In this document: one piece after another, positions 18,879 through 52,446 of the stretch
Layout of the letters: each line of letters starts with the position of its first letter
How positions within the stretch are numbered: the first letter of the stretch is position 1
IMG/VR virus record: IMGVR_UViG_3300028592_000004
Span: 62,001-126,000 of that record
Length of the DNA stretch: 64,000 bases
Reading direction: 5' to 3' (one strand)
Made by a program: the position numbers and the translations under genes
Notes under the pieces: model-generated
Database searches by the model: none
The model's input: only the letters and a program-made list of their open reading frames with translations
What the model was told of the DNA's origin: nothing

Positions 18879-19820
18879 CTATGAATGGTGGGTTTCCGGC
18901 TTCCAGGACTCAACATGCTGTGTGAACGCTTTACACACCAGCGGATCGTGGAAGAAGTAGTCCGGCACAAACAGCCGATCCCCCTTCCGTTCCACAACCG
19001 CGTCAGTCCACGTCCGGCACAGGAAGCTCATGAGGAGCTTGCAGACCCGCAGCTCGGCATGCGTCTTGTTCAGCCGGCACTGCCGCCAGAGGAAGTTCCG
19101 GGGATCCTCCAGCTGCGCGGCGGTCGGACCCGGCTGCCACTGCCAGGAGTTCAACACCAGCTTGGCTCGATCATTCGGCCCGTACGGTCGCTTCGCTCTC
19201 CCTAGCACCCACGCCATCGTCTGAGGGTTCATCCCCATGTACTGCATGACGCAGGACAGACTGTCAGGCTTGTCCCGCTTCACGTACCACCGGGGATCCC
19301 GGATCGCAGCCACGATACGAGCCAGAGCCGCTGTATCGTGATACCGGAAGAAGCTCCACATCTTCGCCGCCGGATGCGTCCAGAGCATGTTCCGGAGCTC
19401 ACTCTCCGGACGCTTCTGGGCGATCGCATCGGCGAGCGCGTAGGGGACATATTCGACAGCGGACATGACGTGCCACCCTCCCATCGAAGAGGGGAGGCCT
19501 TCGAGCTCACGAGCACGAAGAATAGCAATCCGCGGGTCGTCCATCTCAGCCGCGGTCAAAGACAGTCGTGGCGTGCACAGCTCAATAGGAGCCTGCGTCG
19601 CCACGAACAGTCTGGCAATCAGGACCGAGTTCGATGCAGAGGCAATCACCCGAAACCGCTTGCCACGGCTAATCGTGGGCGTCTCCATGAGAGCGTCCAC
19701 ATTCTCAGCGGCAAGGACCGGCGGGTGTTCGCCGTTCGCGCACCAAACTTGGCCCGTGGGGCACACATGCAGCTTCACGCTCGCGACGTCCGTCACTGCA
19801 CGGCTCGACTTAATCGACAT
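18879..19820 (-). CDS. IS110/Nop-domain-derived protein (Tas-like) with eroded RuvC-like N-domain
   Basis: ARIVAAIRDPRWY...CVMQYMGMNP (cf. AA.I.AEIGD..RF...L.SY.GL.P) and HAELRVCKLLMSFLCRTW (cf. HA..R..K.FL..LW); no DEDD acids and no catalytic SG. Confidence 0.55.
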   Translation of the reverse strand: MSIKSSRAVTDVASVKLHVCPTGQVWCANGEHPPVLAAENVDALMETPTISRGKRFRVIASASNSVLIARLFVATQAPIELCTPRLSLTAAEMDDPRIAILRARELEGLPSSMGGWHVMSAVEYVPYALADAIAQKRPESELRNMLWTHPAAKMWSFFRYHDTAALARIVAAIRDPRWYVKRDKPDSLSCVMQYMGMNPQTMAWVLGRAKRPYGPNDRAKLVLNSWQWQPGPTAAQLEDPRNFLWRQCRLNKTHAELRVCKLLMSFLCRTWTDAVVERKGDRLFVPDYFFHDPLVCKAFTQHVESWKPETHHS

Positions 19821-22062
19821 CAACTTTCCTTCTCCGACGACGTTCTTCTTTGATTCGTGCGACGGGGTGCAGGTCAATCATGTGGTCGAACATAGCCGAA
19901 AGACGCGGTTCGTGCGTCACGATCAAGCACTGAAGGCCTGTGGAAGCGGAAAGCTCCCTCAGACGCTCCACTGTCGGTGCCAGAGCCAGCACGTTCTCCT
20001 CGTCGAGGAACTGCGTGGGCTCATCCAGCGTCAACAGACCCAGGTCCTGGGTGAACAACGTGATGCGGGCTACACGAACCAGAATTCCGAGCAGGACTTT
20101 CTGGCCACCTGAGATTCGATCTGCAACTTGCTCCCGGCCGTCAAGGAACCGAGCAGCAAAGGTGAGTCCATCCGCTTGCCCGATCCTGAAATTCGCATCG
20201 ATCCGATGCAGAAGGTCGTTCGTGTCCTCCGCAATCATCGACAAGTAATCGGCAGCCACGATCTTCGGCAGTTCGAGCATCACCTCCCTCACGGAAGAGA
20301 TGTCCCGCTTCAACCGGATCAGGGCATTGCCGTTCTCCGCCCGAACCTTTGCAGATTCCAGGCGGGCCGTCAGAGTCTTCCGCGTCTTGTCCAGGGACGT
20401 GATCTCCCCTTCCAGACCAGATCGCTCCAGCAGTCGCTTCTTCTTTTCTTCGATCTTCTCCCGAGCTTCAGTCAGCTTCTTGGGATCGACCGCCTTTGGC
20501 TGACCGGCCAGCAACTTGTGCCTCCGGTCCTTCAAGGACTTGAGCGTCGCCTTTGCAGCGGTCACGTCCTTGTCGTGAGTCTGAACGTCCTTCTCGGCCT
20601 CCTGAATTTCGAGGAACACGTCCGAGTGATCCTCCTTCTTCTGAGCGAGAGTCTCTGTCAGCTCTTCATAGGTTGAGACCAGCTCTTCGAGCGTCTCCTT
20701 GTCGCCCTTCGGCGCGGCGGGGACGACAGTCTCTTCCAGTTGATCCTTCGTTCGATGGAAGTCCCTCTGGAGCTCCGCCAGCGCACGGTGCCGCTCAGCG
20801 AAGGCCTGATCGTGCTTACGAGATTTGGCCAGGACCTGCTCCGCAGTGCCGAGCTTGAAAACGAGTTCCTCAACACGATCGTCAGCAGAGTCTGCAATCT
20901 CATAGATTTTCGCCAGCAGCCCAGTCGGATTCCGGACCCGGACATACTGATTGACCAGATCCGAAATATACCTCGTGCTGGCGTATTCCCTGTCGAGCGT
21001 TTCTGTGTAGCTGTCGCGCTCTTCCTCAGGAACATAGTTTTTCGGGCGTTCGGGATCGCCAGCCTCTCGCAGAGTCTTGAGCTGCGCCTGCAACTCCTTG
21101 AGGCGCTTGGCAACCTTCTCTTTGGCCTCAGCAGCACGCTGGTAGGCGGAGAAGTTCTTGAGCACAGCCCGGGCGTCATCAACGTCCGCCTGCGACTCAG
21201 CGAGACCCTGCTCAGTGGCCGTGATCTCGTTATCGATGGCACGGATCTTAGTCCGAAGCTGATCCACCTCATCGGCTGCAGAGGTGTCCTCTTCCAGCTC
21301 CTGGACCTTCTTCTCCTGGGCTGCAATGTCGCGTAGCAGCTGGTCGGCATCGGCCTGAATCCGATCGTACGACTCCTGCTGCTTGATCAACGTCTGAAGC
21401 GGGTCCGCTTCGACGTCGTACCCTTCGACATCCCGATACCGCTTGAGGCTTGAGCCGGCCTTACGAGCGGACGCCTCGTTCTCCGCGAGGGAGCCCTCAA
21501 TCGTTCGGATCTCCACATCGGGATCTCCGATCTCAATTGAGGGGAGCCAGTCAGCAATCGCTTTTGCGACGAGCTCAGCCGCCTTAGTGCCGAACATCGA
21601 CTGGAAGGACTGAAGCCGAACCGCGGGCGTCTGATCGATGAAGTCGTACAGCCGACCCTGCCCGATAAAGCAGTTGTCGGAGATGAGCCGCATGTCGGCT
21701 CCGAGAATACGACCGATCTCAGCCGAGACTTCCGTCTCGCCGAACAGGGGCTTGCCGCCGTTGACCGTCATCTGGGTCTTGCACTTCTGCAAGCCCCGGA
21801 CAATCTCCAGGCGGTCGCCGGCGTGGGTCATGTTCAGAACACCGTAGGACTTCGCACCCTCGGGCGCGAGCGTACAGATGTTCGACTCCTTGACACCGGC
21901 GTTGGTGGTGAAGTCGCCAGTGATCAGCCACTGGACGATCTTCAGGATGCTGCTCTTCCCTGAGCCGTTTGGGCCGACGATTCCATTGATCCCCGGCTTG
22001 AAGTCCACCGACAGCTTGCGGTGGTAGCAGACTTCGAAAGCATCCAGGTGCTCAAGATTCAT
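19810..22062 (-). CDS. sbcC: SbcC/Rad50-like SMC ATPase
   Basis: GPNGSGKSS, long coiled coil, ISGGQK, LDEPTQFLD, IVTHE. Confidence 0.9.
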   Translation of the reverse strand: MNLEHLDAFEVCYHRKLSVDFKPGINGIVGPNGSGKSSILKIVQWLITGDFTTNAGVKESNICTLAPEGAKSYGVLNMTHAGDRLEIVRGLQKCKTQMTVNGGKPLFGETEVSAEIGRILGADMRLISDNCFIGQGRLYDFIDQTPAVRLQSFQSMFGTKAAELVAKAIADWLPSIEIGDPDVEIRTIEGSLAENEASARKAGSSLKRYRDVEGYDVEADPLQTLIKQQESYDRIQADADQLLRDIAAQEKKVQELEEDTSAADEVDQLRTKIRAIDNEITATEQGLAESQADVDDARAVLKNFSAYQRAAEAKEKVAKRLKELQAQLKTLREAGDPERPKNYVPEEERDSYTETLDREYASTRYISDLVNQYVRVRNPTGLLAKIYEIADSADDRVEELVFKLGTAEQVLAKSRKHDQAFAERHRALAELQRDFHRTKDQLEETVVPAAPKGDKETLEELVSTYEELTETLAQKKEDHSDVFLEIQEAEKDVQTHDKDVTAAKATLKSLKDRRHKLLAGQPKAVDPKKLTEAREKIEEKKKRLLERSGLEGEITSLDKTRKTLTARLESAKVRAENGNALIRLKRDISSVREVMLELPKIVAADYLSMIAEDTNDLLHRIDANFRIGQADGLTFAARFLDGREQVADRISGGQKVLLGILVRVARITLFTQDLGLLTLDEPTQFLDEENVLALAPTVERLRELSASTGLQCLIVTHEPRLSAMFDHMIDLHPVARIKEERRRRRKVDVD

Positions 22063-23206
22063 CGTCTTCCTCTTCCTCCTCATCGACCGTAGTGATCACC
22101 TCGGTCTGGATTTTCTTCAGCTCATCGAGCACGGCGTTCTTGCTTTCTGCAATCTCCAGCAAGCGCCGGCACAGCCTGTACTCATCGGATCCCTTCGGCG
22201 TCGCTCGCTCAAGGAACGAGAGCAGACTGGTGCGTTGACCGACGCGGTCCTTCGTCTTCTCGATCCGAACGACCTTTGAACCTGTCGGCCGCGGAGAGAG
22301 GAACACGTGGGCCTGATTGTCGAACGCCGTCATCAGGCGGTCGTACACGTCAGGCAGGTTATCGGGATAGTCCACGTGGATGATCGGCGTACGGACCACC
22401 TCCGGAATATCGTCGTCGTAGAAGTTGCCCTCCTTCGCGTCCTCGCACAGATCGTCCAGTCCACCGATGTCATCGAGGCTGAAGGTGTGGAAGGGGCGAG
22501 TGATGAGCTTCACCGACTTGTAGTCGACGAGCTTGTTCCTGTTGAACTCCAGCTCCCAGAAGGCCTTTTCGGGCGGCTCGTCGATCGACTGCATGCACGT
22601 CGATCCTGGAGAGAAGACACGCAACGTCGAGCCGTCCTCGCGCTTCAGCTTCACCGTCTTGTGCTGATGGAGATCCCCAGTCAGAACGACCGGAGCAGGG
22701 CAGTCTTCGAGTTGACCTTCGACGCCGGGCAGGGTGCCCATGAAGTCAGGTCCACCCCAAACCTGGTGACAGACGAACAGACCGATCTGGAGGTCAGCAG
22801 CCTCTTCAAGCTCGGTGAGAAGCTGGTGAGACGCCTGCCAGTCCAGGCCGTACATCTTCAGGCCACCGATAGTGACGAGCCTGCGATGAAAGTGACGCGG
22901 CCAGGGATGAGCATCGAACCGGGCGCGAACCGCGTTCCGCTCGTGCTGACCCTGAATGAAGTAGAACGGAATCCCAGCTTCCTGCAGCCTGTCGAACTGC
23001 TCGTGAGCCTGGACCTGAATGCTGGGAGTCGGATCCACCGTATCGATCAGGTCACCGGCGCCGATGACGGCGTCGACCTTCTCTTCAACGGCCCGATCCA
23101 CGATTTGCTTCAGAGAGAAAACTGCATCGCCAGCCAGATCCGGGTGACGACGCCAGGCACGCTCCTGAAGGTGCCAGTCTGAGGTGGACAGGAGACGAAT
23201 CGACAC
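22052..23206 (-). CDS. sbcD: SbcD/Mre11-like metallophosphoesterase nuclease
   Basis: SDWHL, GAGDLID, QGQHE, TGDLHQH; coupled to sbcC. Confidence 0.9.
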   Translation of the reverse strand: MSIRLLSTSDWHLQERAWRRHPDLAGDAVFSLKQIVDRAVEEKVDAVIGAGDLIDTVDPTPSIQVQAHEQFDRLQEAGIPFYFIQGQHERNAVRARFDAHPWPRHFHRRLVTIGGLKMYGLDWQASHQLLTELEEAADLQIGLFVCHQVWGGPDFMGTLPGVEGQLEDCPAPVVLTGDLHQHKTVKLKREDGSTLRVFSPGSTCMQSIDEPPEKAFWELEFNRNKLVDYKSVKLITRPFHTFSLDDIGGLDDLCEDAKEGNFYDDDIPEVVRTPIIHVDYPDNLPDVYDRLMTAFDNQAHVFLSPRPTGSKVVRIEKTKDRVGQRTSLLSFLERATPKGSDEYRLCRRLLEIAESKNAVLDELKKIQTEVITTVDEEEEEDDES

Positions 23207-32122: not shown

Positions 32123-32135
32123 AGAGACCTCCTAG

Positions 32136-32531: not shown

Positions 32532-32534
32532 GGT

Positions 32535-33656: not shown

Positions 33657-33669
33657 TGTGAGGGTCCTT

Positions 33670-33687
33670 TCAAAACCCGCGGATTGG
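33670..33687. promoter_or_regulatory. 18-bp palindromic operator-like motif
   Basis: TCAAAACCCGCGGATTGG (15/18), 13 nt before thyX ATG. Confidence 0.65.
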
Positions 33688-33688
33688 A

Positions 33689-35153: not shown

Positions 35154-35185
35154 CGGAACGGCCCTCCAGAGCCCCAGGACAGCGT

Positions 35186-39856: not shown

Positions 39857-40242
39857 TCGCCTTTGGCGATTCGAATCGAGTCATCGTCCATGTGGTGGGT
39901 CGAGATCTCGATCAGCTCGTTGTAGAAGTCCATACCCCGGAAGCGGTGGCGGAGCCCGGTTGGGATCCGCACGCACTCTCCGGGGCTGAGGACTCGCGTC
40001 ACCAGGTCTGGGGAGCTCAGATCGAGCCCGCCGTCCGGACCCAGGCAGTCTTTCGGCGACGTGAACAACAGAACGTGACCCGCGCGGACGAAGAAGCACT
40101 CGTCCTTGAGCCGGTGGTAGTGGAAGCTGCATTGCTTCCCCTGTTCAATCACCAGGCTCTTGCCGCAATAGCCGGGCTGGTTGCACATGATCAGCTCATG
40201 GCCCCAGCCCTTCTCCACACGTTCCGTTTCGATGGCTTCCAT
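39853..40242 (-). CDS. cupin-fold sugar isomerase-like protein
   Basis: KGWGHE...YCGK.L....G..CSFHYH..KDECF, PTGLRHRF. Confidence 0.8.
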   Translation of the reverse strand: MEAIETERVEKGWGHELIMCNQPGYCGKSLVIEQGKQCSFHYHRLKDECFFVRAGHVLLFTSPKDCLGPDGGLDLSSPDLVTRVLSPGECVRIPTGLRHRFRGMDFYNELIEISTHHMDDDSIRIAKGD

Positions 40243-40261
40243 GCCGCACCGTCCTTAGGGC

Positions 40262-40651
40262 CTAATCGTCCTCGTCGTCGAGGAACTCCTCGTTCTCGTC
40301 GTCCTCGTCGTCGAAATCTTCGTCGTCGAGCTCTTCGTCATCGAACTCTTCGTCGTCGAGTTCCTCATCATCGAACTCTTCGTCGTCCTCTTCGTCGTCG
40401 AACTCTTCGTCCTCAAATTCCTCTTCGTCGTCGAACTCTTCGTCGTCGAGCTCTCCTTCGAAGTCATCCGCCAGCGCGGCAGGAGAAGGGATCCCAAGCC
40501 GAGCGTAGAGATCTTCCTCACGGTCAAACGCGACTCCGGTTGTATGAAGCACTGGTCCGATCCTTTTGGCTTTGTTCGGGCTCAAGTTGATATTTGCGTC
40601 GCTGGGATACCCACCACTCGGCTGACACGGCCCAGTGTGGCGAATCACCAT
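40262..40651 (-). CDS. small protein with extremely acidic C-terminus
   Basis: DDEEFDDEEL-type repeats over ~60 aa. Confidence 0.6.
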   Translation of the reverse strand: MVIRHTGPCQPSGGYPSDANINLSPNKAKRIGPVLHTTGVAFDREEDLYARLGIPSPAALADDFEGELDDEEFDDEEEFEDEEFDDEEDDEEFDDEELDDEEFDDEELDDEDFDDEDDENEEFLDDEDD

Positions 40652-43172: not shown

Positions 43173-44345
43173 ATGACCATCCTTGATCAGACCTCGGATC
43201 TCTCCGGCATCGAGACTGCGCGTGTGATGCAGGCCTACAGGGCTCCGGGTTACGTGAAGCAGGCATCTGTCTCCACGGCTCCCGAGAACGCTGCAGACTC
43301 GCGCCTCTACGCCGACTCCGTGCAGCGGAAGTTTCCGGTGCACACCAAGGCAGCGACGTGGCTGTCGAACGCATTCTGGTGCGAGAAGCGGGCGAATGTC
43401 CAGCCCGCCGATCGGCAACGCATCCAGACCGCTCTTCTCAAGGCCGCAGACTTCTACGGCATCCGTGCCGAAGTCGACTCGCTATACAAGCAGGCCGAAG
43501 TCGACAACGATGAGAACAAGCTGCCGGATGACGCCTTCGCCTTCCTTGGGGAAGACGCCAGTGGTAATCGTACGCGGCACATGCCGATGCGTACGGCCCT
43601 GGAAACGAAAACCGCTGCAGCTTTCTTCGTCGAGCACCGTGACCGTTTCACCTTTCCACAGCAGCAGAAGGTCGCAGTCCGGATCCTCGACAAGGCCGCA
43701 TCCCAGGGAGCAGGCCTGACGAACGAGGTCGATCAGATCCTTTCCCGGTGTGCAGGCTTCGGGATGTGCGCTGCCTCCCGAACGGCGGAATTCGTAGAGA
43801 AGCGGGCCGCGATGATCAAGTACTCGGATGGGAAGCTCTCGCAGCAGCTCATCGACACCGCGCAGGCCATCCGGAATAACCCGGAGCACGCCCGCCAGCC
43901 GGCCATCCTGGTCAAGCTCGCTGAGCAGCTCGACGTTCTCGATCGCCGCTTCCAGTTCAACAAGCGGTATCACCAGGACATTGAGCGTCCGGCGGATGTG
44001 CTGTTCGAGGTCAACGAGTTTTCGGTCAAGCAGGCCGCGGCCGATCACATCCAGATGACGAGCGGCTCGGTCTACCGGATCTCCGACCTGAACCACGTCA
44101 AGCTGGCGGACGTTCGCGACTACCTCGGCACCGACCTGGCTGACGCCCTCACGGACGACGGCATGACTGTCAGCCTGGAGAAGGCTGCCACGATCCTCCC
44201 GACGTTGCCCCGCGGTGACGCGGAGACGTTCGATCGGGTGGTCGAGTCGGTCATCCGGCCGGTGACGAAGATGGCAGCTGCCCGTGCCGGTCTCAGCCGG
44301 ACGGAGATGTGGGACCTGGCGATGCAGGCGTCTGGCAACCGCTAG
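43173..44345 (+). CDS. hypothetical protein, probably virion-associated
   Basis: 390-aa ORF with strong codon bias, YADSVQRKFPVHTKAATWLS and repeated KxAA/KQAS motifs. Confidence 0.75.
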   Translation: MTILDQTSDLSGIETARVMQAYRAPGYVKQASVSTAPENAADSRLYADSVQRKFPVHTKAATWLSNAFWCEKRANVQPADRQRIQTALLKAADFYGIRAEVDSLYKQAEVDNDENKLPDDAFAFLGEDASGNRTRHMPMRTALETKTAAAFFVEHRDRFTFPQQQKVAVRILDKAASQGAGLTNEVDQILSRCAGFGMCAASRTAEFVEKRAAMIKYSDGKLSQQLIDTAQAIRNNPEHARQPAILVKLAEQLDVLDRRFQFNKRYHQDIERPADVLFEVNEFSVKQAAADHIQMTSGSVYRISDLNHVKLADVRDYLGTDLADALTDDGMTVSLEKAATILPTLPRGDAETFDRVVESVIRPVTKMAAARAGLSRTEMWDLAMQASGNR

Positions 44346-45077
44346 TCACTTACGCCAGCAGATGCCGCAACGGGCGCAGGTCATCTTGGTCTTGAAGTTG
44401 ATCCCAGCTTCGACCGGACAGACCTGCACCCCGTTCATCTTCTTCAGGACCGACTTCGGCGAATCGCGGAAGACCAGGTCCACGTCAGATGGGGCCACCA
44501 GCTCATCCAGCGGGTCGATGCACATGTAAGCGCGTCGCGTGCTGGGGCTCTTTGGCGCCGGACCTGTCTCTCGGTCCTCGCTGAGCCACATGCGCCAGTT
44601 CGGCAAGAGGGCCAGCTTTTCGATTTCTGTCAGGATCTCAGGATCTCGCCAGGACCGTGTGTAGCTAAAGAACCGCACATTGCGTAGCCGTGTGGCGATC
44701 TGGCCCCAGGCGGCGGTATAGGAAGCGCTAAAGAAGTCTCCAGAGACATGGACCCGAAGGACCGATATCCCTTTGAGACGAATGGCCTGAACCATCAATT
44801 CGGCAAACCTGGGATCCTGTACGGCCTCCCAGTTCTTCATGTAGCGCTCTTGGATGCTCGGCATGTGGAACAGGCCGGAGCGGGCATAACAGTGACGACG
44901 GCAGTGAGCCGTCGACCCGGGGCAGGTGTCAACCGCTGGCAGGCTGAAGGAGAAGATGGCTTCCCCCAGCTTCGTGTTTCCCACGCACAGCGATCGAAGA
45001 AGATCCTCCCCGACATTTCGATTCTCAAGGACAACCACGTCTGCTCCTTCCAGGAGTGGGTGTCCGCAGTGGCTCAA
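44346..45077 (-). CDS. GP88-like (radical-SAM-related Fe-S) protein
   Basis: GNTKL..FSFSLP..TCPG...C...CYA, LRVHVSGDF, YTRSW, C-terminal CP...CARCGICW. Confidence 0.75.
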   Translation of the reverse strand: MSHCGHPLLEGADVVVLENRNVGEDLLRSLCVGNTKLGEAIFSFSLPAVDTCPGSTAHCRRHCYARSGLFHMPSIQERYMKNWEAVQDPRFAELMVQAIRLKGISVLRVHVSGDFFSASYTAAWGQIATRLRNVRFFSYTRSWRDPEILTEIEKLALLPNWRMWLSEDRETGPAPKSPSTRRAYMCIDPLDELVAPSDVDLVFRDSPKSVLKKMNGVQVCPVEAGINFKTKMTCARCGICWRK

Positions 45078-45496
45078 TCGATGTCGAGCTTCCTCGCGTG
45101 ATCCTGCGGCTTCGGCGCCGCCGGCAGCGAGTTCGAGCCGGTCTGCGGCTGATTGATGAGTGAGTCCTGACTCATCGTCAGGACCTTTCTGGAGTGCTTG
45201 CACTCCTTGCGATTCGACCATCCCGGACAGTTACAGCTCGCTGTATTGTCCGGCCACTTGATGGCGGTGTAGATCGTCGTGCCATTGGAGCTGTACTCCT
45301 GCAGCGTGACGGAGGCCGATGCAGGTCGGCCGTTGATGAGCTTGCGGCCGTTCTGGAACGACCAGGAGGCAGTTGGCACGTGCATTATCTCCGGCTGGCG
45401 TAAAAATGGACCCGTCCGCTGCGGCTTTACCCACCACAGGACGTTGAGCAGCACCAGGACGGTCCACCCTATGACGATGACGAGACTGTAGTCCAT
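45074..45496 (-). CDS. SWIM zinc-finger protein with N-terminal TM helix
   Basis: SCNCPGW...CKH. Confidence 0.7.
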   Translation of the reverse strand: MDYSLVIVIGWTVLVLLNVLWWVKPQRTGPFLRQPEIMHVPTASWSFQNGRKLINGRPASASVTLQEYSSNGTTIYTAIKWPDNTASCNCPGWSNRKECKHSRKVLTMSQDSLINQPQTGSNSLPAAPKPQDHARKLDID

Positions 45497-46560
45497 CAGT
45501 CGAGATCCAGGCTGCGAGCCTCCAGACCCATACTGTCACGGACGACTTGCATCGCCGCTGTGTCGAGACAGTGGTCCTTCAGAGCGTTGGCCACGGTCGC
45601 CAGCTGCTTGGCGTACGGCGCGATCGAAGCCGAGAACCCGACACCTCGGTCCTGTCCGGCTCGACCCGTCTCCACGACGTGCTCGACTTCCGTGCGGAGC
45701 TTGGCTGCCTTCTGCAGGAGCTCCTTATCGCCGATGTCAGCGAACGCTTCGACGCGACGGATCGCATCGCGGACTTCGTTGAAGGTGGCGTCCTTCACGA
45801 ACTTGGCGTCCGTCAGCTTCTTGACCATGTTGTCGAGCGAAGCCGCCAGCAGTCGCCGCGGCTCCTCCAGCATCGACGCCATCGCCGTGTTGATCTCGGT
45901 CCGGGCCGATGCACGGGCCGCTTCGATCTCCGCCCGCATCGTGGAGTCGGTCACGGAGCCGATTGACGCTTCGCCGATCTTGAAGATCCCCCACGACACG
46001 CGAAAGCGGTTCGTGATGTTCTTCTTCTCCGGCAGCCGGCCGAGGATCTTGATCTTGCAGTCCTGCTCGCCGAGCAGGGGCTCCCAGATGTCCTTGTTGT
46101 ACTGGACGACGTCGTACTCCCAGGCCGCGTAGAGTTCCGCGGCCAGCCGATTGACGGCGCCCTGGATCTGTCGCAGTTCCTTGAACACGTCGGTCGAGGC
46201 TCGCACCGGCAGCACCCGCATGTTGAGGATGCTGGGACCTGCCTGGAGCGGATCAGCTTCGTCTTCGGTTTGCTCCGTCATGCGAAGCGCAGCCGTATAG
46301 ACGTCCAGGATCTTGGCGACCTTGCCGAACTCTGCCTGGAACTTGTCGTGCCACTTGTCCGGGATGAGGTTCACCCGACCCTTGCTCACGGCCTGTTTCG
46401 GGACGTTCTGTCCGTCGACCGTGATCTGCAGGTTGGGCAGCGTGTGAATGCCGCGGTACTGGCTCCGCCGGACCGACAGCATGTAGAACTTCTTGTCGAG
46501 ATCACTACTCGGCGCCGGCGGGAGTTCCACCTTCGGCTTGGTCTTGGTCATTGTGGGCAT
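45496..46560 (-). CDS. DUF3150-like helical protein
   Basis: FRVSWGIF, KFVKDATFNEV and C-terminal ARSLDL follow the family pattern; context with DUF1257/DUF2997. Confidence 0.5.
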   Translation of the reverse strand: MPTMTKTKPKVELPPAPSSDLDKKFYMLSVRRSQYRGIHTLPNLQITVDGQNVPKQAVSKGRVNLIPDKWHDKFQAEFGKVAKILDVYTAALRMTEQTEDEADPLQAGPSILNMRVLPVRASTDVFKELRQIQGAVNRLAAELYAAWEYDVVQYNKDIWEPLLGEQDCKIKILGRLPEKKNITNRFRVSWGIFKIGEASIGSVTDSTMRAEIEAARASARTEINTAMASMLEEPRRLLAASLDNMVKKLTDAKFVKDATFNEVRDAIRRVEAFADIGDKELLQKAAKLRTEVEHVVETGRAGQDRGVGFSASIAPYAKQLATVANALKDHCLDTAAMQVVRDSMGLEARSLDLD

Positions 46561-46915
46561 CTTTCCGCTCGCAGAACACGTTGTCATGCAACCACCGCAG
46601 TTCAGCTTCGATGGCTTGCTGATGGAGATCGAACGGACCGAGAACCGGTCCAGCGCTAGGAGTCATGTCGGCCCACCAGGCGGCGGGAAAGTGAAAGAGG
46701 AGAAACGCAAGACCCAGGTCGAGACCGGTCTCGGGCATGACCTTCTGCGTCATGAGGCTGTGTATCGCCTCATCCGACAGCTCCTCGGTTGGCTCGACGC
46801 GGCTGGCTCGGGACCGCGTCATAGAACCCATCTTGTTGAAAAACGGCACGAGCGAATCAGCGTGAACCGACTCGATCGTACCGTCCGGACGAATCACAAG
46901 GTCGACAGTCTTCAC
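46505..46915 (-). CDS. small conserved protein of the DUF1257/DUF2997 module
   Basis: LVIRPDGTIESVH...RASRVEP and LGPF...QAIEAELRWL. Confidence 0.65.
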   Translation of the reverse strand: MKTVDLVIRPDGTIESVHADSLVPFFNKMGSMTRSRASRVEPTEELSDEAIHSLMTQKVMPETGLDLGLAFLLFHFPAAWWADMTPSAGPVLGPFDLHQQAIEAELRWLHDNVFCERKDAHNDQDQAEGGTPAGAE

Positions 46916-47091
46916 TGCGACACACGCTCCCGTTCCGTCTCCGTGGGCGTCTTGTCTTCCCGGTTCTCGACCAGGCCCAGCTTCTCTTCGAGAGGCCGGG
47001 TGGCGATCTTACAGGCATCGCCGCTGAAGCCCACAGCGTTGATGTTGGTCTTCCCCTGCGGGCTGATCGTGATCTCGATGTACTTTTCCAT
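46912..47091 (-). CDS. DUF2997 protein
   Basis: Manually translated MEKYIEITISPQGKTNINAVGFSGDACKIATRPLEEKLG... (59 aa). Confidence 0.8.
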   Translation of the reverse strand: MEKYIEITISPQGKTNINAVGFSGDACKIATRPLEEKLGLVENREDKTPTETERERVSQ

Positions 47092-47127
47092 CCGAGTTCG
47101 CGCTTTCTGTTGAGGGTGAGGAATGGA

Positions 47128-47490
47128 TCAGAGGACGGGTACACGCATCCGGATTGAGCCGTCCGTGAGGACTTCTCGCTCCGAAATGAAGTAGCCCTGC
47201 TCCTGGACGTAGGCGAGGGCGCCTTCTTCCGCGTACCGGCAGACGACCTCATCAAAGGCCTTCTGCCCAGCACGCCGGGCGTCTGCGTCCGTCGACACCT
47301 GACCGGTGGTCAGATCGACGACGCACGGATAGTGCCAGCCGCGAGGCCAGAATCCCAGACCGTCGACGGTCTGGCTACCCCACAGCTTGTGCTTGCCCTG
47401 AACCGGGGCCTTGAGACCGAGAGCCGCACAAGCCTTCTCCAAAAGGACGCGGTCCTTGAACTCGGTCTGGACGTTCACACGATGCGACAT
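47128..47490 (-). CDS. DUF1257 (Ycf35-like) protein
   Basis: MSH...TEFKD...LEKAC..LG, GWHYP.V.D..TG, DGSI.M. Confidence 0.8.
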   Translation of the reverse strand: MSHRVNVQTEFKDRVLLEKACAALGLKAPVQGKHKLWGSQTVDGLGFWPRGWHYPCVVDLTTGQVSTDADARRAGQKAFDEVVCRYAEEGALAYVQEQGYFISEREVLTDGSIRMRVPVL

Positions 47491-47500
47491 GACGAACCTT

Positions 47501-49189
47501 TCAGTTGGTGTCGAGGTTACGAGCCCGGCTGGGCCGTCTCGTGCTCCTCGACTCTTTGGTGGCGGGACGGGCGAACGAGCTGCAGAACTTGCGGATTTCA
47601 TCCAGCATGTCCTTCTGGCTCTTGAAGATCGTACTCTCGCCGCGCTTGGCGGCGGCTTCTTCGATCATCTCCAGGGTGGGCACGTGACGGCCATGCTCGA
47701 AGGCCGTCAGCCGCGAGTTGATGACGACGTCCTCCAGTTCCGATCCGACGAAGTTTTCCGTCATATCGAGAACAGAGCGCCACTTGTCGCTGCCGAGCTC
47801 TTTTTCGAGCCGCTCGATGCTGACTCCGCGCTTGGCGAAGTGAACTTCCAGGATCTCCCTGCGAACGTTGGGCGAGGGGACATCCGTGAAGTACGTCTCA
47901 TCGAACCGCCGGAAGAACTCTGGCGCCACGCCGGCGACGGAGTTCATCGTGACGACGATGAACGTGTCGTTCCGCTCCTCCTGCATCCAGTTCAGGAGCC
48001 GGCCGCGGACGCGGTTGGCGACTTCGTGTCCGCCGTCCGCGCTCTGCCCCATCGTCTTTTCGAACTCGTCGAAAACGGCGACGCAGCCGCGGTGCGCAGA
48101 CAGCTTGGTCAGCACGTTCTCCAGCCGATTCTCTGACTGACCGACGTACTGTCCGAAGATCTCACCGACGTTCACCCAGTAGCTGGGGAACGCCTGGCCG
48201 CAGACCTCCTGGAAGATGCCTGCGATGATCTTCGCGAACTGCGACTTCCCGGAGCCCGGGACGCCGATCAGCGCGATGCCGCGAGGCGTGTCGAGCTTCG
48301 CTTCCTTGCCGCCGTCCGTGTAGGCGAGGGCTCGACGACGAATATCCGGGATGCAGTTGTCGAAGCCGCACACCTCGTCGAGGTTCGGGATTTGATTCGG
48401 CGAGATGTACTTGAGCACACCGCCGGAACCGACCAGCCGCGCCTTCTGATCCCGGATCGTGAGCATCATCTCGGGGCAGAACCCCTTCTGCTCGATGATG
48501 GCCAGCGACAGGGCGTCGGATGCCTGCTGTCGGGAGAGGCCCCGCAGCGACGCGGAGATGCTGTTCCGCATCCCCGGTTCGAGTTCCTTCGTCTTATCGC
48601 CCCGACCGTGCTGGAACGACGCATGGACGTAGTCCACGATCGATCCGAGCTCTTCCTGATTCGGATGCGGAAGCGGCAAGGGCTGCAGCAGGTGCTGCAG
48701 CTCCGGATGGAGCGTCGGCACCGACTGGATGAAGAAGATCGGCCGCGAGAACGTCGCGTTCGACAGTTGCTGCTCGACGATCAGGTTCTGGAGCAGCTGT
48801 CTGGCTGTGACCGACTGGTCCAGCACGGCATGCAGGTTGTGCATGACGACGATCGCCGACTGGATCATCGACGGGAGCGCTGTCAGGACGCTCAGTGCCT
48901 GGATTGGATCCCGGTACTTCGCTTCGCCCAGAAGATCCTTCTGCTGAGTCGCGGCGGCGCCCTTTACGATGAAGCCGCGGTGGACGTCCCACTGAATGAA
49001 GCTGTAGGTCGCCAGGTCCTTCTTCGTTTGCCGGCGAGCGTCCATCTCAGTGGCGACGCTCTCAAGAATCATGGCCGCGTTTCGCGGCTCTTCGGTCTGC
49101 ACGACGACGGCCTGAAAGCCGGCACGAACCAGATTCGTGGCCTGTCGCGTGAACTCAGTTTGATGCTGCTTGATCTTCAGATCGGCCAT
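47501..49189 (-). CDS. Ycf46-like AAA+ ATPase
   Basis: GVPGSGKS, VFDEFEK, TMN...PEFFRRFDE; inactive N-terminal AAA-like module. Confidence 0.85.
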   Translation of the reverse strand: MADLKIKQHQTEFTRQATNLVRAGFQAVVVQTEEPRNAAMILESVATEMDARRQTKKDLATYSFIQWDVHRGFIVKGAAATQQKDLLGEAKYRDPIQALSVLTALPSMIQSAIVVMHNLHAVLDQSVTARQLLQNLIVEQQLSNATFSRPIFFIQSVPTLHPELQHLLQPLPLPHPNQEELGSIVDYVHASFQHGRGDKTKELEPGMRNSISASLRGLSRQQASDALSLAIIEQKGFCPEMMLTIRDQKARLVGSGGVLKYISPNQIPNLDEVCGFDNCIPDIRRRALAYTDGGKEAKLDTPRGIALIGVPGSGKSQFAKIIAGIFQEVCGQAFPSYWVNVGEIFGQYVGQSENRLENVLTKLSAHRGCVAVFDEFEKTMGQSADGGHEVANRVRGRLLNWMQEERNDTFIVVTMNSVAGVAPEFFRRFDETYFTDVPSPNVRREILEVHFAKRGVSIERLEKELGSDKWRSVLDMTENFVGSELEDVVINSRLTAFEHGRHVPTLEMIEEAAAKRGESTIFKSQKDMLDEIRKFCSSFARPATKESRSTRRPSRARNLDTN

Positions 49190-49859
49190 TCGAACTTCCG
49201 TTGGCAGTGATGGATTGAATCAGCTGCTCGGTGGTTCCGTTCTCCAGAACCAGCGAGCTCAGTTGTCGGAGCAGGGCCTGAACCCCCTCACGGATGATGG
49301 CGTTGATCTCGTCGGTTTTCGACCGCTCCATGTCGAAAATTGCGTTGAACATGACGGGATCGTCGGCGAAGTCGCCTTGCACGTTGGCAGCCTCTGGCCG
49401 CACGGCAATCTTGAGCACATCCGGAGGGACCATGATGCCCTCCTGATCGAGCACGACCCCGATGTACCGGCAGATCTCCGGCGAGAAGGGGTCGTCTTCT
49501 TCCGGCGGATTGAGGAGCATGGCCTCGCTGATTCCCCAGGCACACTCCTCGGCATCCGCCGGGTCGAATGTGGTTGGGTCGAACGTGCTGCCGGAAAGCA
49601 CGTTGCACAGCATGATGAAGTCGGGGGTCAGCTTGAAGAAGCGGTCCGACGTCAGAATGGCGATCCCTGCCATCAGACGGTCGAGGATCCCGCGAGCTAG
49701 CTGGAGATTGAAATCCGACTGCAGCTCCATCCGGATCGTCTCAGCGTCCCACTGAAGACTCTCAGGACCGTACGTGTCCATCAGGATCACGACGAGCGGC
49801 GTCGCGTACGTGTCACGACTCTGGAGGAGTTTGCGCTTGCTGTCCTTGCTGCGACTCAT
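49155..49859 (-). CDS. conserved jumbo-phage hypothetical protein
   Basis: 234-aa ORF, YGPESLQWD and FIMLCNVLSG...ECAWGISEA. Confidence 0.7.
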   Translation of the reverse strand: MSRSKDSKRKLLQSRDTYATPLVVILMDTYGPESLQWDAETIRMELQSDFNLQLARGILDRLMAGIAILTSDRFFKLTPDFIMLCNVLSGSTFDPTTFDPADAEECAWGISEAMLLNPPEEDDPFSPEICRYIGVVLDQEGIMVPPDVLKIAVRPEAANVQGDFADDPVMFNAIFDMERSKTDEINAIIREGVQALLRQLSSLVLENGTTEQLIQSITANGSSNGRSEDQAASN

Positions 49860-51062: not shown

Positions 51063-51096
51063 AAAAAAAAACCCGGTCAGGGGGTGCCTGACCGGG
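51063..51096 (-). terminator. strong intrinsic terminator
   Basis: Minus strand CCCGGTCAGG-5nt-CCTGACCGGG followed by 9 T. Confidence 0.9.
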
Positions 51097-51290
51097 CTCG
51101 CGCTCATGTGATTGGGATTACTTCATTGGAGCACCTGTACGAGTGGTTGTGTCGGATGGGTGAGGGAAAGTCTCAATCTTGTCGACCACTAACTGGTGGC
51201 CAACCACGGTCTCCGTCAGTCAGTGGTCAGTGCTAGAGCATGATACACCTCATTGTTCCTGGTCTTTCGCCAACGGCTAAGCTGACATCG
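51097..51290 (-). ncRNA. candidate structured non-coding RNA
   Basis: ORF-free ~200 nt ending in a strong terminator; three-way junction closed by GACCACTGACT/AGTTAGTGGTC (51183-51228). Confidence 0.35.
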
Positions 51291-52068: not shown

Positions 52069-52446
52069 CTAGAAGGTCACTTTGAGGTGCTTTCCATTCT
52101 TGCGGTAGAGGATGGCACAACCATCTACAGGGTATCCGATCTTGCCCTGGATGAAGAGACGCACTCGCTCTCGTACTTCAGGGCTCGCGTTGCTGATGAC
52201 TTCCACGAAGGAGTTCCGATAGCCGTCGATCGTCTTGCTGCCCGGCCCGCAGCACTGATTCGTGCTCAGCTCCGAGAGCATGACCTGATACGCCGGCACG
52301 GTGTAGACGCCGAACCCGCGGAACTCCGGGCAGGCCGCGAAAAAGGTGGGATCACCGAGTAGTTGCCGGAGCAGCTCCTTGGTGACGATCAGGAAGTTAG
52401 GCCCGGATGCTTCTCGCTCAGTCCGCGGCGGGGAACTGCCGACCAT
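52069..52446 (-). CDS. hypothetical protein, apparent paralogue of 51316..51630
   Basis: Start MVGSSPP at 52446; similar helix/Cys layout. Confidence 0.55.
   Translation of the reverse strand: MVGSSPPRTEREASGPNFLIVTKELLRQLLGDPTFFAACPEFRGFGVYTVPAYQVMLSELSTNQCCGPGSKTIDGYRNSFVEVISNASPEVRERVRLFIQGKIGYPVDGCAILYRKNGKHLKVTF

What the first reader, a model, noticed from the sequence alone, without database searches (positions are those of the whole stretch)
44346..49189. Complete AAA(Ycf46)-DUF1257-DUF2997-small-DUF3150-SWIM-GP88 operon of unknown function
Seen: seven co-oriented, closely packed and mostly overlapping genes, including DUF2997, which is missing from the supplied ORF track (46912-47091). 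Established: Ycf46-like AAA, DUF1257 and DUF2997 co-occur in cyanobacteria, planctomycetes and their mobile elements without a known function. Inference: a multi-component ATP-driven remodelling machine (AAA motor plus small adaptors, membrane-anchored SWIM finger and an Fe-S/radical-SAM-like enzyme) that acts on host or competing-element nucleoprotein complexes.
Basis: partly seen in the sequence, partly recalled or inferred. Interest (0 to 1): 0.65.

Follow-up and report, generated by a model that had tools for sequence, protein, structure and literature searches.

The report
Phage AAA module with shared tails
A 229-kb phage carries a widely conserved gene set for an ATP-driven protein-pulling motor plus four small partners of unknown function. 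The motor, two partners and about seven other phage proteins all end in the same six-residue tail, which points to an undescribed address-tag system.

Summary
The seven minus-strand genes exist as described. The window is part of a complete 229-kb phage. AAA, DUF1257, DUF2997 and GP88 pass Pfam cut-offs. DUF3150 and SWIM do not pass for this protein, though DUF3150 holds at family level. A survey of about 160 viral, bacterial and plasmid loci shows a five-gene core: Ycf46-like AAA, DUF1257, DUF2997, an unnamed small protein and DUF3150. The core stays linked while gene order is permuted. SWIM and GP88 are optional. The unit probably starts further upstream, after a terminator at 51069-51099.

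New finding: AAA, DUF3150 and SWIM all end in R-x-[LIV]-D-x-[DEN]. Ten ORFs in this phage end that way against 0.07 expected, including an SbcC-like ATPase. Related phages, bacteria and a cultured Rhizobium phage carry their own variants of the tail, which co-vary within each genome.

Best reading (about 0.4): a tag-addressed AAA+ remodelling system. The motor and a variable set of element-encoded proteins share a docking or recognition tail. DUF1257 and DUF2997, which never carry it, are the candidate receptor. The receptor and the biological role remain unproven: the complex prediction gave no answer and fold searches gave no informative match. No paper in the searched library describes the system.

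The parts
47501..49189 (-). Ycf46-like classical AAA+ ATPase, 562 aa. It has an N-terminal domain of about 260 aa, an AAA core and a disordered C-terminal tail ending RARNLDTN.
   Evidence: PF00004 E 2.7e-18. phrog_8638 matches full length at 1.4e-64. Nearest PDB relatives are VAT, Cdc48/p97 and FtsH. Walker A G309-K315, Walker B D374-E375, pore-loop V349-G350 (YVG), sensor N416 and Arg fingers R427-R428 are invariant in the alignment of the five closest homologues A2; all but V349 also in the 13-sequence A1.
47504..47521 (-). Codons of the AAA C-terminal tail R-N-L-D-T-N.
   Evidence: Translation. Tail kept on AAA homologues of operon-bearing loci.
47128..47490 (-). DUF1257 (Ycf35-like) protein, 120 aa, starting M-S-H. 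It carries no tail.
   Evidence: PF06868 29.2 bits, above cut-off. M-S-H start is near-invariant. AlphaFold model has pLDDT 92.8 with an alpha+beta fold. Best PDB match is only Z 6.2.
46912..47091 (-). DUF2997 protein, 59 aa, with invariant G21, G24 and C27. It carries no tail.
   Evidence: PF11211 E 3.2e-12. Alignment A5.
46505..46915 (-). Unnamed 'small' core protein, 136 aa. It has an N-terminal PDG beta-hairpin motif, an internal R-A-S-x-V-E motif that resembles the tail, and a C-terminal GPF...AE..WL helix.
   Evidence: No Pfam, PHROG or NCBIfam family. Homologues in 21 further viral loci and 17 bacterial loci. Invariants G12, R36, E41, E105; S38 near-invariant.
45496..46587 (-). DUF3150-family protein, 363 aa (the start may be M10 or M13). 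It has an alpha/beta domain, a four-helix bundle and a disordered tail ending EARSLDLD.
   Evidence: Family-level match to PF11348 in 19 of 24 members. Model pLDDT 81 with tail residues 358-363 below 50. R358 is invariant.
45499..45516 (-). Codons of the DUF3150 tail R-S-L-D-L-D.
45074..45496 (-). Membrane-anchored SWIM-like zinc-finger protein, 140 aa, with tail HARKLDID. Optional component.
   Evidence: PF04434 18.8 bits, just under the 19.6 cut-off. CxCx9CxH and an N-terminal hydrophobic helix are visible. Homologues in 6 further viral loci and 6 bacterial loci.
45077..45094 (-). Codons of the SWIM protein tail R-K-L-D-I-D.
44346..45038 (-). GP88-family Cys-rich protein, 230 aa from GTG 45038. 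Optional neighbour. It has no tail here, but the L041 homologue ends ERAISL.
   Evidence: PF17338 E 5.8e-34. Invariant C39, C46, C50, C207, C221, C224, C227. Stand-alone in 390 phage records.
8358..9128 (-). 256-aa ORF ending GARSLDVE, directly downstream of the 1362-aa DNA polymerase gene. Another carrier of the tail.
19810..22083 (-). SbcC/Rad50-like ATPase, 757 aa, ending RRRKVDVD, next to an SbcD-like gene. Another carrier of the tail.
   Evidence: PF02463. phrog_77. Tail. Homologues in G003 and G004 lack the tail.
51069..51099 (-). Intrinsic-terminator-like hairpin (13-bp stem plus T run) that probably ends the preceding unit. The transcription unit holding the module likely starts after it.
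49155..49859 (-). 234-aa ORF overlapping the AAA start. Probably co-transcribed, but not part of the conserved system.
   Evidence: Conserved only in the phage clade. Lies about 100 kb from the AAA module in G001 and about 85 kb in G002.

Best explanation
The locus encodes a tag-addressed AAA+ protein-remodelling module of mobile elements.

Shown:
- The AAA is a classical-clade, pore-loop-bearing ATPase of the Ycf46 architecture.
- It is persistently linked with DUF1257, DUF2997, a small unnamed protein and a DUF3150 protein.
- The ATPase, DUF3150, the SWIM protein and a variable, lineage-specific set of other element-encoded proteins end in one short tail. The tail has the form basic residue, x, hydrophobic, polar or acidic, hydrophobic. 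Here it is R-x-[LIV]-D-x-[DEN].
- The sequence of the tail drifts between lineages but stays matched within each genome.

Inferred:
- The tail is a docking or recognition peptide for one common receptor.
- The best receptor candidate is the DUF1257/DUF2997 pair, the two core proteins that never carry the motif. The small protein carries an internal look-alike, R-A-S-x-V-E. This would bring the hexameric motor together with tailed partners or clients. The alternative receptor is the AAA pore or N-domain itself, as ClpX reads ssrA and MuA tails.
- The motor then unfolds, extracts or disassembles the tailed proteins or their assemblies.
- Gene context suggests the process serves the replication and recombination phase of the element. 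The context includes an SbcC-like carrier, an ORF behind the DNA polymerase, SSB and primase in a Paenibacillus element, and Bet/Exo beside DUF3150 in IncC plasmids. That last step is the weakest.
For: Motor:
- AAA motifs are intact and the nearest relatives are unfoldases.
- In L030 and L031 a group I intron with an HNH gene sits exactly in Walker B, a typical homing site in a functionally critical sequence.

Linkage:
- The five core genes are linked in at least five different gene orders in IMG/VR phages.
- They are also linked in Verrucomicrobia, Lentisphaerae and Rokubacteria MAGs.
- They occur on the Ca. Manganitrophus plasmid CP114559, annotated AAA-DUF1257-DUF2997-DUF3150 plus an 84-aa small homologue.
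- The triad is also present in Rhizobium phage L338C.

Tail:
- 10 ORFs in the 229-kb genome carry it against 0.067 expected. The Poisson probability is 5e-19, and the maximum in 500 shuffles was 2.
- The looser tail pattern R-x-[LIVM]-[DES]-[LIVMFT]-x(0-2)-end is found on 35 of 3077 ORFs in operon loci against 8 of 2275 in control loci, p = 0.0016.

Within-genome co-variation:
- G001 (the phage of L026) has KR[IV]VE[LV] on five proteins.
- G005 (the phage of L010) has R-x-[IV]-D-L on five proteins.
- L040 has KRSLEV and KRSLEF.
- Anaerolineae have SALEF/SAIEF and SVLEL/SVLEL.
- Verrucomicrobia have RKLAV, RKFHLAA and RRIVV.
- L338C has four extra ORFs with [RK]-x-[IV]-x-L-[DS].
- Sources.

Other points:
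- The tail is disordered in the DUF3150 model.
- Solo Ycf46-like AAAs of Armatimonadota and most cyanobacteria lack the tail.
- Extra carriers have no homologues between phages. This gives the pattern of a conserved apparatus with variable clients.
Against: - No physical evidence exists. The complex prediction of DUF1257 + DUF2997 + DUF3150 tail scored 0.00, which the tool calls no answer.
- No protease or other effector is in the module, so the output of the remodelling is unknown.
- The AAA carrying its own tail is awkward for a simple degron model.
- The SbcC-like homologues of related phages lack the tail, so the link to DNA metabolism may be incidental.
- Many related phage loci share ancestry, so part of the linkage is inherited synteny.
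- The loose motif used outside G000 has a non-trivial background of 2 to 4 expected per genome.
- G003 and G004 show few carriers.
Confidence: 0.4

Rival explanations
1. One reading: the AAA and its adaptors remodel host or competing-element nucleoprotein complexes, acting in anti-defence or takeover. The tails only hold the machine together.
For: - The module sits on phages, plasmids and mobile islands.
- The plasmid copy is flanked by JAB and Fic genes.
- Weak partial PADLOC and NCBIfam hits of the AAA core to IetA/IteA anti-phage ATPases.
Against: - The IetA hits cover only the generic AAA core, and no S8 protease partner is present.
- No DNA-binding domain was found in the core.
- Clear homologues also sit in bacterial chromosomes and, as Ycf46/Ycf35, in cyanobacteria.
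- Nothing ties the module to host targets.
Confidence: 0.15
2. The tail is a docking motif for a replication hub such as a sliding clamp or an SSB-like protein. The module is then a replisome or recombination accessory, for example a clamp- or complex-recycling ATPase.
For: - Carriers include an SbcC-like ATPase and an ORF directly behind the DNA polymerase.
- RSLDLD, RSLDFEE and RALDF resemble the T4-type clamp-binding C-terminus (S/T)LDFL and the core of bacterial QL[SD]LF (both from my own knowledge).
- In the Paenibacillus element the gene before the AAA ends QLSLFD, and the element carries dnaN, ssb and a primase zinc ribbon.
- In IncC plasmids DUF3150, Bet, Exo and a neighbour all end in SSB-like acidic-aromatic tails.
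Against: - No DnaN or gp45 family match in the phage genome.
- The DNA polymerase itself lacks the tail.
- Many lineage variants (RRIAA, RKLAV, KRIVEL) are unlike any clamp motif.
- Q and the terminal aromatic of the bacterial motif are absent here.
Confidence: 0.15
3. The tail is a sorting signal that loads a variable cargo set into the capsid, or into a recipient cell for plasmids, as with encapsulin cargo peptides or T4SS C-terminal signals. The AAA unfolds or loads that cargo.
For: - The pattern is a conserved apparatus plus a fast-evolving, ORFan-rich set of carriers with a common C-terminal peptide.
- The module lies beside the terminase and the 964-aa and 390-aa conserved genes in this clade.
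- DUF3150 is found on 814 conjugative plasmids.
Against: - In G001 and G002 the module is far from the genes that flank it here, up234 and conv390.
- Carriers lie among DNA and nucleotide metabolism genes, not virion genes.
- Bacterial chromosomal copies have no capsid or T4SS nearby.
Confidence: 0.1
4. The core is a redox or radical chemistry unit. DUF1257 (invariant N-terminal Ser-His) and DUF2997 (invariant Gly, Gly, Cys) form a metal- or radical-bearing pair. Fe-S enzymes mature or service it: NrdG-like radical SAM in sister systems, Cys-rich GP88 here, ferredoxin Fed7 in cyanobacteria. The AAA acts as its chaperone.
For: - A 186-187-aa radical SAM with CxxxCxxC lies beside the triad in 15 loci. 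Its closest relatives are PFL activase (E 5e-20) and NrdG (109.6 bits).
- A DUF2997-ycf35-fed7 cluster occurs in cyanobacteria (PMC4284462).
- Invariant residues are listed.
Against: - The window has no radical SAM gene in the module.
- GP88 is optional and unrelated to radical SAM by profile comparison.
- This model does not explain the shared tails or DUF3150.
Confidence: 0.1
5. There is no functional unit. The genes are neighbours only through inherited synteny, and the tail is a compositional accident.
For: Many of the viral loci belong to one phage clade with shared flanking genes.
Against: - Linkage survives at least five gene orders and transfer between phages, a plasmid and several bacterial phyla.
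- The tail count is about 150-fold over expectation and co-varies within genomes.
Confidence: 0.03

Closest known systems
Cyanobacterial and plastid Ycf46 (AAA) with Ycf35 (DUF1257), DUF2997 and Fed7
   Same: - Same AAA architecture, with full-length matches to cyanobacterial loci at 26-28% identity.
- Same DUF1257 with the M-S-H start, and same DUF2997.
- The triad is contiguous in Cyanobium-type loci L167 and L171.
   Different: - Cellular Ycf46 lacks the C-terminal tail.
- It has no DUF3150, small, SWIM or GP88 partners.
- In Synechocystis-type genomes DUF2997-ycf35 sit with a ferredoxin rather than the AAA.
- Its function is itself unknown. Reported links are to CO2 use, KaiC and stress (PMC13683863).
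ClpX with ssrA- and MuA-type C-terminal tags and the SspB adaptor (own knowledge)
   Same: An AAA+ unfoldase recognises short C-terminal peptides on otherwise unrelated proteins, helped by a small adaptor. Some lineage tails here (HLAA, RRIAA, RRLAA) look like ssrA or MuA ends.
   Different: - The AAA clade differs: classical Cdc48/FtsH-like, not HCLR.
- There is no ClpP-type protease partner.
- The motor itself carries the tag.
- The tag sequence is private to each element.
Proteasome activators sharing C-terminal HbYX or GQYL tails (PAN, Mpa, Bpa, Cpa); Hsp70/Hsp90 EEVD tails on TPR adaptors (own knowledge)
   Same: An AAA ring and unrelated proteins share one C-terminal docking peptide for a common receptor. 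This logic best fits the AAA carrying the tail.
   Different: No 20S-like or TPR receptor was identified. The proposed receptor, DUF1257/DUF2997, is unproven.
IncC/SXT backbone: CobS-like AAA, Bet, Exo, DUF3150, VWA, DUF3085
   Same: A DUF3150 protein sits next to an AAA+ ATPase on a mobile element. DUF3150 and its neighbours again share a C-terminal tail.
   Different: - The AAA is MoxR/CobS-type with a VWA partner.
- There is no DUF1257 or DUF2997.
- The tail is acidic-aromatic (DYFF, DFFF, DHYY, TFYW).
IetAS / SgiAT (AAA+ with an S8 protease; defence or toxin-antitoxin)
   Same: A SpoVK/Ycf46/Vps4-superfamily AAA on mobile elements, with PADLOC IetA hits of E 9e-11.
   Different: The hits cover only the AAA core (residues 295-540). 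No S8 protease is present, and the partners are entirely different.

Membership tests
Classical-clade AAA+ ATPase (PF00004) | Walker A GxxGxGK[ST], Walker B hhhhDE, pore-loop aromatic-hydrophobic-Gly, sensor-1 Asn, second-region-of-homology Arg fingers | tested here: met
   GVPGSGKS, VAVFDEFE, YVG, N416 and R427-R428. These residues are invariant in the alignment of the five closest homologues A2; all but V349 are also invariant in the 13-sequence A1. PF00004 E 2.7e-18. Best PDB hits are VAT, p97 and FtsH.
Ycf46-like AAA | Single AAA module preceded by the family's N-terminal domain of about 250 aa, with full-length similarity to cyanobacterial Ycf46 | tested here: met
   tblastn covers residues 4-535 against cyanobacterial contigs L120, L153, L155, L163 and L176 at E 1e-41 to 1e-47. 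I did not verify the name 'Ycf46' for those records.
DUF1257 / Ycf35 (PF06868) | Score above Pfam gathering cut-off; conserved M-S-H N-terminus | tested here: met
   29.2 bits against a 22.2 cut-off. The M-S-H start is seen in phage and bacterial homologues.
DUF2997 (PF11211) | Score above Pfam cut-off | tested here: met
   46.5 bits against 24.1.
DUF3150 (PF11348) | Score above Pfam cut-off | tested here: inconclusive
   The window protein scores 16.2 bits against 24.9. However, 19 of 24 aligned homologues match PF11348, best 1e-24, and homologues are annotated DUF3150 on plasmids.
SWIM zinc finger (PF04434) | CxCxnCxH signature and a score above cut-off | tested here: inconclusive
   The signature C-N-C-x9-C-K-H is present. 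The score is 18.8 bits against a 19.6 cut-off.
GP88 (PF17338) | Score above Pfam cut-off | tested here: met
   118.4 bits against 24.4.
Radical SAM (as proposed for GP88) | CxxxCxxC cluster motif and profile similarity to radical SAM enzymes | tested here: not met
   GP88 has Cx6Cx3C. hhalign against the NrdG-like partner family gave probability 0.2%. The PDB profile search found nothing.
IetAS / IteA anti-phage system | IetA-type AAA paired with an S8 protease (IetS) | tested here: not met
   Only partial AAA-core hits, at 34.7 bits against a 510 cut-off for IteA. No protease is in the module.
Bacterial beta-clamp-binding motif | QL[SD]LF-type peptide, plus a clamp to bind | tested here: not met
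   The window's tails lack Q and the terminal aromatic. The phage genome has no PF00712, PF02768 or PF02916 match. Binding to the host clamp is not testable here.
Tag-directed AAA+ unfoldase (ClpX/ssrA-like logic) | Tag-dependent binding and unfolding of tagged proteins | not testable with these tools
   Only the shared tail and the intact pore loop are shown. The complex prediction gave no answer.

The most novel reading that the evidence does not exclude
Mobile elements from phages to plasmids carry a private protein-addressing code. A conserved apparatus (Ycf46-like AAA, DUF1257, DUF2997, small protein, DUF3150) reads an element-specific C-terminal hexapeptide. Each element attaches that peptide to its own changing set of proteins. 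This would be a new class of tag-and-motor system, comparable in logic to ssrA/ClpX or encapsulin cargo tags but encoded and diversified by the element itself. It could also give the first mechanistic handle on the unexplained Ycf46/Ycf35 proteins of cyanobacteria and plastids.
Probability: 0.3. Interest if true: 0.8.

Novelty: new variant of a known kind. Interest (0 to 1): 0.68.

Why it matters
Ycf46, Ycf35 (DUF1257), DUF2997 and DUF3150 are large families with no known mechanism. They occur in plastids, cyanobacteria, hundreds of conjugative resistance plasmids (DUF3150 on 847 PLSDB plasmids) and many phages.

The shared tail gives a concrete, cheap experimental entry point:
- A six-residue peptide can be deleted, transplanted or used as bait.
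- The client list can be read directly from each genome.
- A cultured phage-host pair carries the system: Rhizobium phage vB_RleS_L338C on R. leguminosarum 3841.

If the tail is an address tag, it defines a new way in which mobile elements organise or regulate their own proteins. It would also supply a sequence rule for finding functionally linked ORFans in phage genomes.

Tried and rejected
- Complex prediction on DUF1257 + DUF2997 + the last 34 residues of DUF3150, with my own alignments: score 0.00, verdict 'no answer'. This is neither support nor evidence against binding.
- Foldseek and VIA searches of the DUF3150 model: only generic four-helix bundles, Z about 10, below the level that is meaningful for helical proteins.
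- Foldseek and VIA searches of the DUF1257 model: best Z 6.2 (TA0095), then TBP and KA1-like half-barrels at about 5. No assignment was made.
- PDB sequence and profile searches found nothing usable for DUF1257, DUF3150, the small protein, GP88 or the AAA N-domain. Two designed TIM barrels at E 3e-4 were judged spurious.
- GP88 against the NrdG-like radical SAM by hhalign: no similarity.
- Paenibacillus DUF6744 against the DUF3150 profile: probability 4%, so I rejected it as a homologue.
- The PADLOC JetD hit of DUF1257 (E 3e-4) was not followed up, because the fold model shows no Toprim-like match.
- DnaN and gp45 clamp families in the phage genome: none found.
The five-sequence alignment worked.
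- tblastn of DUF1257 against cultured phages: no match at E 1e-3, although Pfam finds DUF1257 in L338C.
- The 234-aa and 390-aa conserved flanking genes were considered as extra members. I rejected them because they lie far from the module in G001 and G002.
- Literature searches for DUF1257, DUF2997, DUF3150, the Pfam accessions, Ycf46/Ycf35, 'Ycf46 with phage' and 'jumbo phage AAA+ unfoldase' returned no description of this system.
- No reads tools and no alternative genetic code were used.

Full report
**What is there**

The window is bases 62001-126000 of a 229,210-bp IMG/VR virus record that CheckV rates complete. It is a jumbo phage of about 60% G+C. It encodes a gpA-type terminase, RNase H, glycosyltransferases, a collagen-like fibre protein, a 1362-aa DNA polymerase and SbcCD-like genes.

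Seven co-oriented ORFs lie on the minus strand between 44346 and 49189. Four pass Pfam cut-offs:
- AAA: PF00004, E 2.7e-18.
- DUF1257: 29.2 bits.
- DUF2997: E 3.2e-12, at exactly 46912-47091.
- GP88: E 5.8e-34.

The 'DUF3150' protein (16.2 bits against 24.9) and the 'SWIM' protein (18.8 against 19.6) fall below cut-off. DUF3150 is secured at family level, because 19 of 24 aligned homologues match PF11348, best 1e-24. The SWIM protein shows CxCx9CxH behind an N-terminal hydrophobic helix.

Two gene starts need correction:
- DUF1257 begins at M38 of the long ORF, so the gene is 47128-47490. Phage and bacterial homologues nearly all begin M-S-H.
- GP88 begins at GTG 45038 behind a GGAAGGAG ribosome-binding site.

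The unit is probably longer than seven genes. The only strong minus-strand terminator upstream is at 51099-51069, and three further ORFs precede the AAA gene.

**Is it a functional unit?**

I collected 80 IMG/VR loci and 80 bacterial genome loci around full-length relatives of the AAA. I annotated their ORFs with HMMs iterated from the window's proteins.

About 35 viral loci carry the partners, in at least five different gene orders:
- AAA-DUF1257-DUF2997-small-DUF3150-(SWIM)-GP88
- AAA-DUF3150-DUF1257-DUF2997-small
- DUF1257-DUF2997-AAA-DUF3150-small
- AAA-DUF1257-DUF2997-DUF3150
- small-AAA-DUF1257-SWIM-DUF2997-DUF3150

The same five genes recur elsewhere:
- Verrucomicrobia, Lentisphaerae and Rokubacteria MAG contigs.
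- A Ca. Manganitrophus plasmid, where GenBank itself annotates AAA, DUF1257, DUF2997 and DUF3150 in a row, followed by an 84-aa homologue of the small protein.
- The cultured Rhizobium phage vB_RleS_L338C, which has AAA, DUF1257, DUF2997 and small.

The core is therefore five genes. SWIM occurs in the window, 6 further viral loci and 6 bacterial loci. GP88 occurs in the window and 7 further viral loci. Both are optional, and GP88 also stands alone in 390 actinophage and cyanophage records. Two other conserved flanking genes (49155-49859 and 43173-44345) belong to the phage clade's synteny. They lie about 100 kb from the module in G001 and about 85 kb in G002.

A sister variant ('type A') lacks DUF3150 and the small protein. 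Instead it places a 186-187-aa radical SAM enzyme of the NrdG/PFL-activase kind next to the triad. Examples are:
- A Paenibacillus mobile element that also carries SSB, a primase zinc ribbon, a methylase, a helicase and dnaN.
- Planctomycete loci with three AAA paralogues plus Hsp70/GrpE, FGE-sulfatase, kinase and FHA genes.

In cyanobacteria DUF2997 and ycf35 cluster with ferredoxin fed7 (PMC4284462).

**The motor**

All catalytic and pore motifs of a classical AAA+ are present: Walker A, Walker B D374-E375, the YVG pore loop, sensor-1 N416 and Arg fingers R427-R428. They are invariant in the alignment of the five closest homologues (A2), and all but V349 are also invariant in the 13-sequence A1. 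The nearest solved relatives are the unfoldases VAT, Cdc48/p97 and FtsH. NCBIfam places it nearest CDC48, FtsH, CdvC and PAN.

The N-terminal 260 residues are family-specific and have no detectable relative. No protease domain or protease gene accompanies the motor.

In phages L030 and L031 the gene is split exactly inside Walker B (LLMVD | EIDK). The insert is a group I intron (RF00028, 55.1 bits) carrying an HNH endonuclease ORF.

**The partners**

- DUF1257 gives a confident AlphaFold model (pLDDT 92.8). It is a beta-alpha-beta4-alpha sheet-on-helix fold with a C-terminal hairpin. The best PDB matches reach only Z 6.2 (TA0095) and about 5 (TBP and KA1-like half-barrels), so I assign no function from the fold.
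- DUF2997 is a unit of about 45 aa with invariant G21, G24 and C27.
- The small protein has an N-terminal PDG hairpin, an invariant internal R-A-S-x-V-E and a C-terminal GPF...AE..WL helix.
- DUF3150 models as an alpha/beta domain plus a four-helix bundle (pLDDT 81) ending in a disordered tail. Fold matches are generic.
- GP88 has seven invariant cysteines (Cx6Cx3C and Cx13Cx2Cx2C) but no detectable similarity to radical SAM.

**The unexpected feature: a shared C-terminal tail**

Three module proteins end in nearly the same six residues:
- AAA: ...RARNLDTN
- DUF3150: ...EARSLDLD
- SWIM: ...HARKLDID

A scan of all 1344 ORFs of at least 60 aa in the 229-kb genome finds ten that end in R-x-[LIV]-D-[LIVT]-[DENH]. 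All ten are on the main coding strand. The rate of the same pattern inside proteins predicts 0.067, and 500 shuffles of the C-terminal 30 residues gave at most 2. The Poisson probability is 5e-19.

The other carriers are:
- An SbcC/Rad50-like ATPase (window 19810-22083).
- A 256-aa ORF directly behind the DNA polymerase gene (8358-9128).
- A weak nucleotidyltransferase-like ORF and two ORFans next to NDK and NAMPT genes.
- An 83-aa ORF and a 304-aa ORF elsewhere in the genome.

The tail is a family trait. R358 of DUF3150 is the only invariant residue in the whole family alignment. AAA and SWIM homologues of operon-bearing loci carry matching tails. Solo Ycf46-like AAAs of Armatimonadota and most cyanobacteria do not.

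The sequence drifts between lineages but stays matched within a genome:
- G001, a complete 209-kb phage: KR[IV]VE[LV] on five proteins, and TRVVES on the AAA.
- G005: R-x-[IV]-D-L on five proteins.
- G002: GR[VI]IDIE on two proteins, plus GRVITL and GRRIDA.
- L040: KRSLEV and KRSLEF.
- Two Anaerolineae: SALEF with SAIEF in one, SVLEL with SVLEL in the other.
- Verrucomicrobia: RKLAV, RKFHLAA and RRIVV.
- Rhizobium phage L338C: MSLDS on the AAA and [RK]-x-[IV]-x-L-[DS] on four hypothetical proteins.

Across the first set of loci, a looser pattern (R-x-[LIVM]-[DES]-[LIVMFT], then up to two residues) ends 35 of 3077 ORFs in operon loci against 8 of 2275 in control loci, p = 0.0016.

The extra carriers have no homologues between phages, and the SbcC-like homologues of G003 and G004 lack the tail. 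The picture is a conserved apparatus with a variable set of tagged proteins.

DUF1257 and DUF2997 are the only core proteins that never carry the motif. The small protein carries an internal look-alike.

IncC plasmids show the same logic with different parts. DUF3150 sits between a CobS-like AAA and a VWA protein. DUF3150, Bet, Exo and a neighbour all end in acidic-aromatic tails: DYFF, DHYY, TFYW and DFFF.

**Interpretation**

The best-supported reading is a tag-addressed AAA+ remodelling module. The tail is a short, disordered docking or recognition peptide, with an alternating hydrophobic pattern typical of strand addition. It brings the motor and a set of element-encoded proteins to one receptor.

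Two arrangements are possible:
- Hub model. DUF1257/DUF2997 form the receptor, and the AAA and its clients dock on it. The logic matches the shared HbYX/GQYL tails of proteasome activators or the EEVD tails of Hsp70 and Hsp90 (own knowledge). This model explains why the AAA itself is tailed and why exactly these two proteins are not.
- Direct-read model. The AAA pore or N-domain reads the tail, as ClpX reads ssrA and MuA tails or CbbX pulls the RbcL tail (own knowledge).

My single complex prediction, for the hub model, returned no answer. The receptor is therefore inferred, not shown. What the remodelling achieves is unknown. Gene context leans toward replication and recombination, but weakly.

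Rivals are set out with their evidence in the report sections:
- A clamp- or SSB-type replisome docking motif.
- A capsid or transfer sorting signal.
- A redox or radical unit centred on DUF1257/DUF2997.

**Comparison and novelty**

Annotation already records that AAA, DUF1257 and DUF2997 occur together. No paper in the searchable library describes the five-gene module, its two variants or the shared tail.

It works like a tag-plus-adaptor AAA+ system, but it is not a member of any characterised one:
- It is not ClpX-like in clade.
- It has no protease.
- It fails the IetAS and radical SAM membership tests.
- Its tails do not meet the bacterial clamp-motif definition.

I rate it a new variant of a known kind, with a 0.3 chance that it is a genuinely new class of element-private protein-addressing system.

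**Limits**

- Many viral loci are related by descent.
- The loose tail pattern has a background of 2 to 4 hits per genome.
- HMM E-values within my small databases include self-hits.
- The host is unknown.

Noticed in passing
L030 8944-9773 (and the identical L031), IMG/VR contigs 3300025133_006513 and 3300025066_000032: The AAA gene of these phages is split inside Walker B (LLMVD | EIDK). The insert is a group I intron (RF00028, 55.1 bits, E 5e-13) that carries an HNH homing-endonuclease ORF.
   Followed up: yes
L183 (IncC plasmid NZ_CP092067.1, record 20942-35571): In the IncC backbone, DUF3150, Bet, the lambda-type exonuclease and a 297-aa neighbour all end in acidic-aromatic tails (DYFF, DHYY, TFYW, DFFF) reminiscent of the SSB C-terminus. 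DUF3150 there sits between a CobS-like AAA and a VWA protein. DUF3150 is on 847 PLSDB plasmids, 814 of them conjugative.
   Followed up: partly
L181 (Tepidisphaeraceae MAG contig CAYQTE010000014.1) and L110, L121, L115, L125: Planctomycete loci hold three Ycf46-like AAA paralogues, one fused to a protein kinase, around DUF1257-DUF2997. They also hold Hsp70/GrpE, three FGE-sulfatase-domain proteins ending ARTLTT, an NrdG-like radical SAM and an FHA protein. This looks like a large signalling or conflict-type island.
   Followed up: partly
L180 (Paenibacillus GCA_000499205.1, AWUK01000016.1): A mobile-element-like region reads RES, primase zinc ribbon, SSB, DUF6744, AAA, DUF1257, DUF2997, NrdG-like radical SAM, LysM, methylase, DEAD helicase and DnaN. 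The DUF6744 protein ends QLSLFD, a canonical beta-clamp-binding motif.
   Followed up: partly
Genome G000 38282-40496 (outside the window; L099 282-2496): The phage encodes a nicotinamide phosphoribosyltransferase (NAMPT; PF04095 1e-28) and a nucleoside diphosphate kinase (PF00334 4e-30) next to three tail-carrying ORFs. This may be an NAD-salvage or nucleotide-supply function.
   Followed up: no
window 52389-54224 (-): A 611-aa protein combines a heptosyltransferase (GT9) domain with a weak GT2 match. It is conserved in 10 related phage loci and followed by further glycosyltransferase-like genes, so the phage may glycosylate something.
   Followed up: no
window 62093-63967 (-): A 624-aa protein has five stretches of collagen triple-helix repeats (PF01391 8e-34). 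It is probably a fibre.
   Followed up: no
Genome G000 7047-9714 and 35299-35835 (outside the window): A small paralogous family of 156-216-aa proteins is present, four in tandem and one distant. Identity is 31-39%, and all end in L-K-x-x-G/E-[LIV]. No function is known.
   Followed up: no
window 9058-13146 (-): The DNA polymerase gene is unusually long (1362 aa). The polymerase match covers only the last 300 or so residues, and there is a weak ribonucleotide-reductase-like hit at 1012-1050. The large N-terminal part is unexplained and could hold an intein or fused domains.
   Followed up: no
KF614509.1 3996-10916 and 81374-81649 (Rhizobium phage vB_RleS_L338C): Four hypothetical proteins of this cultured phage end in [RK]-x-[IV]-[NSD]-L-[DS], like its AAA (MSLDS). 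Three of them lie among dUTPase, glutaredoxin and ThyX genes between terminase and portal. This gives a tractable model for testing the tail.
   Followed up: partly
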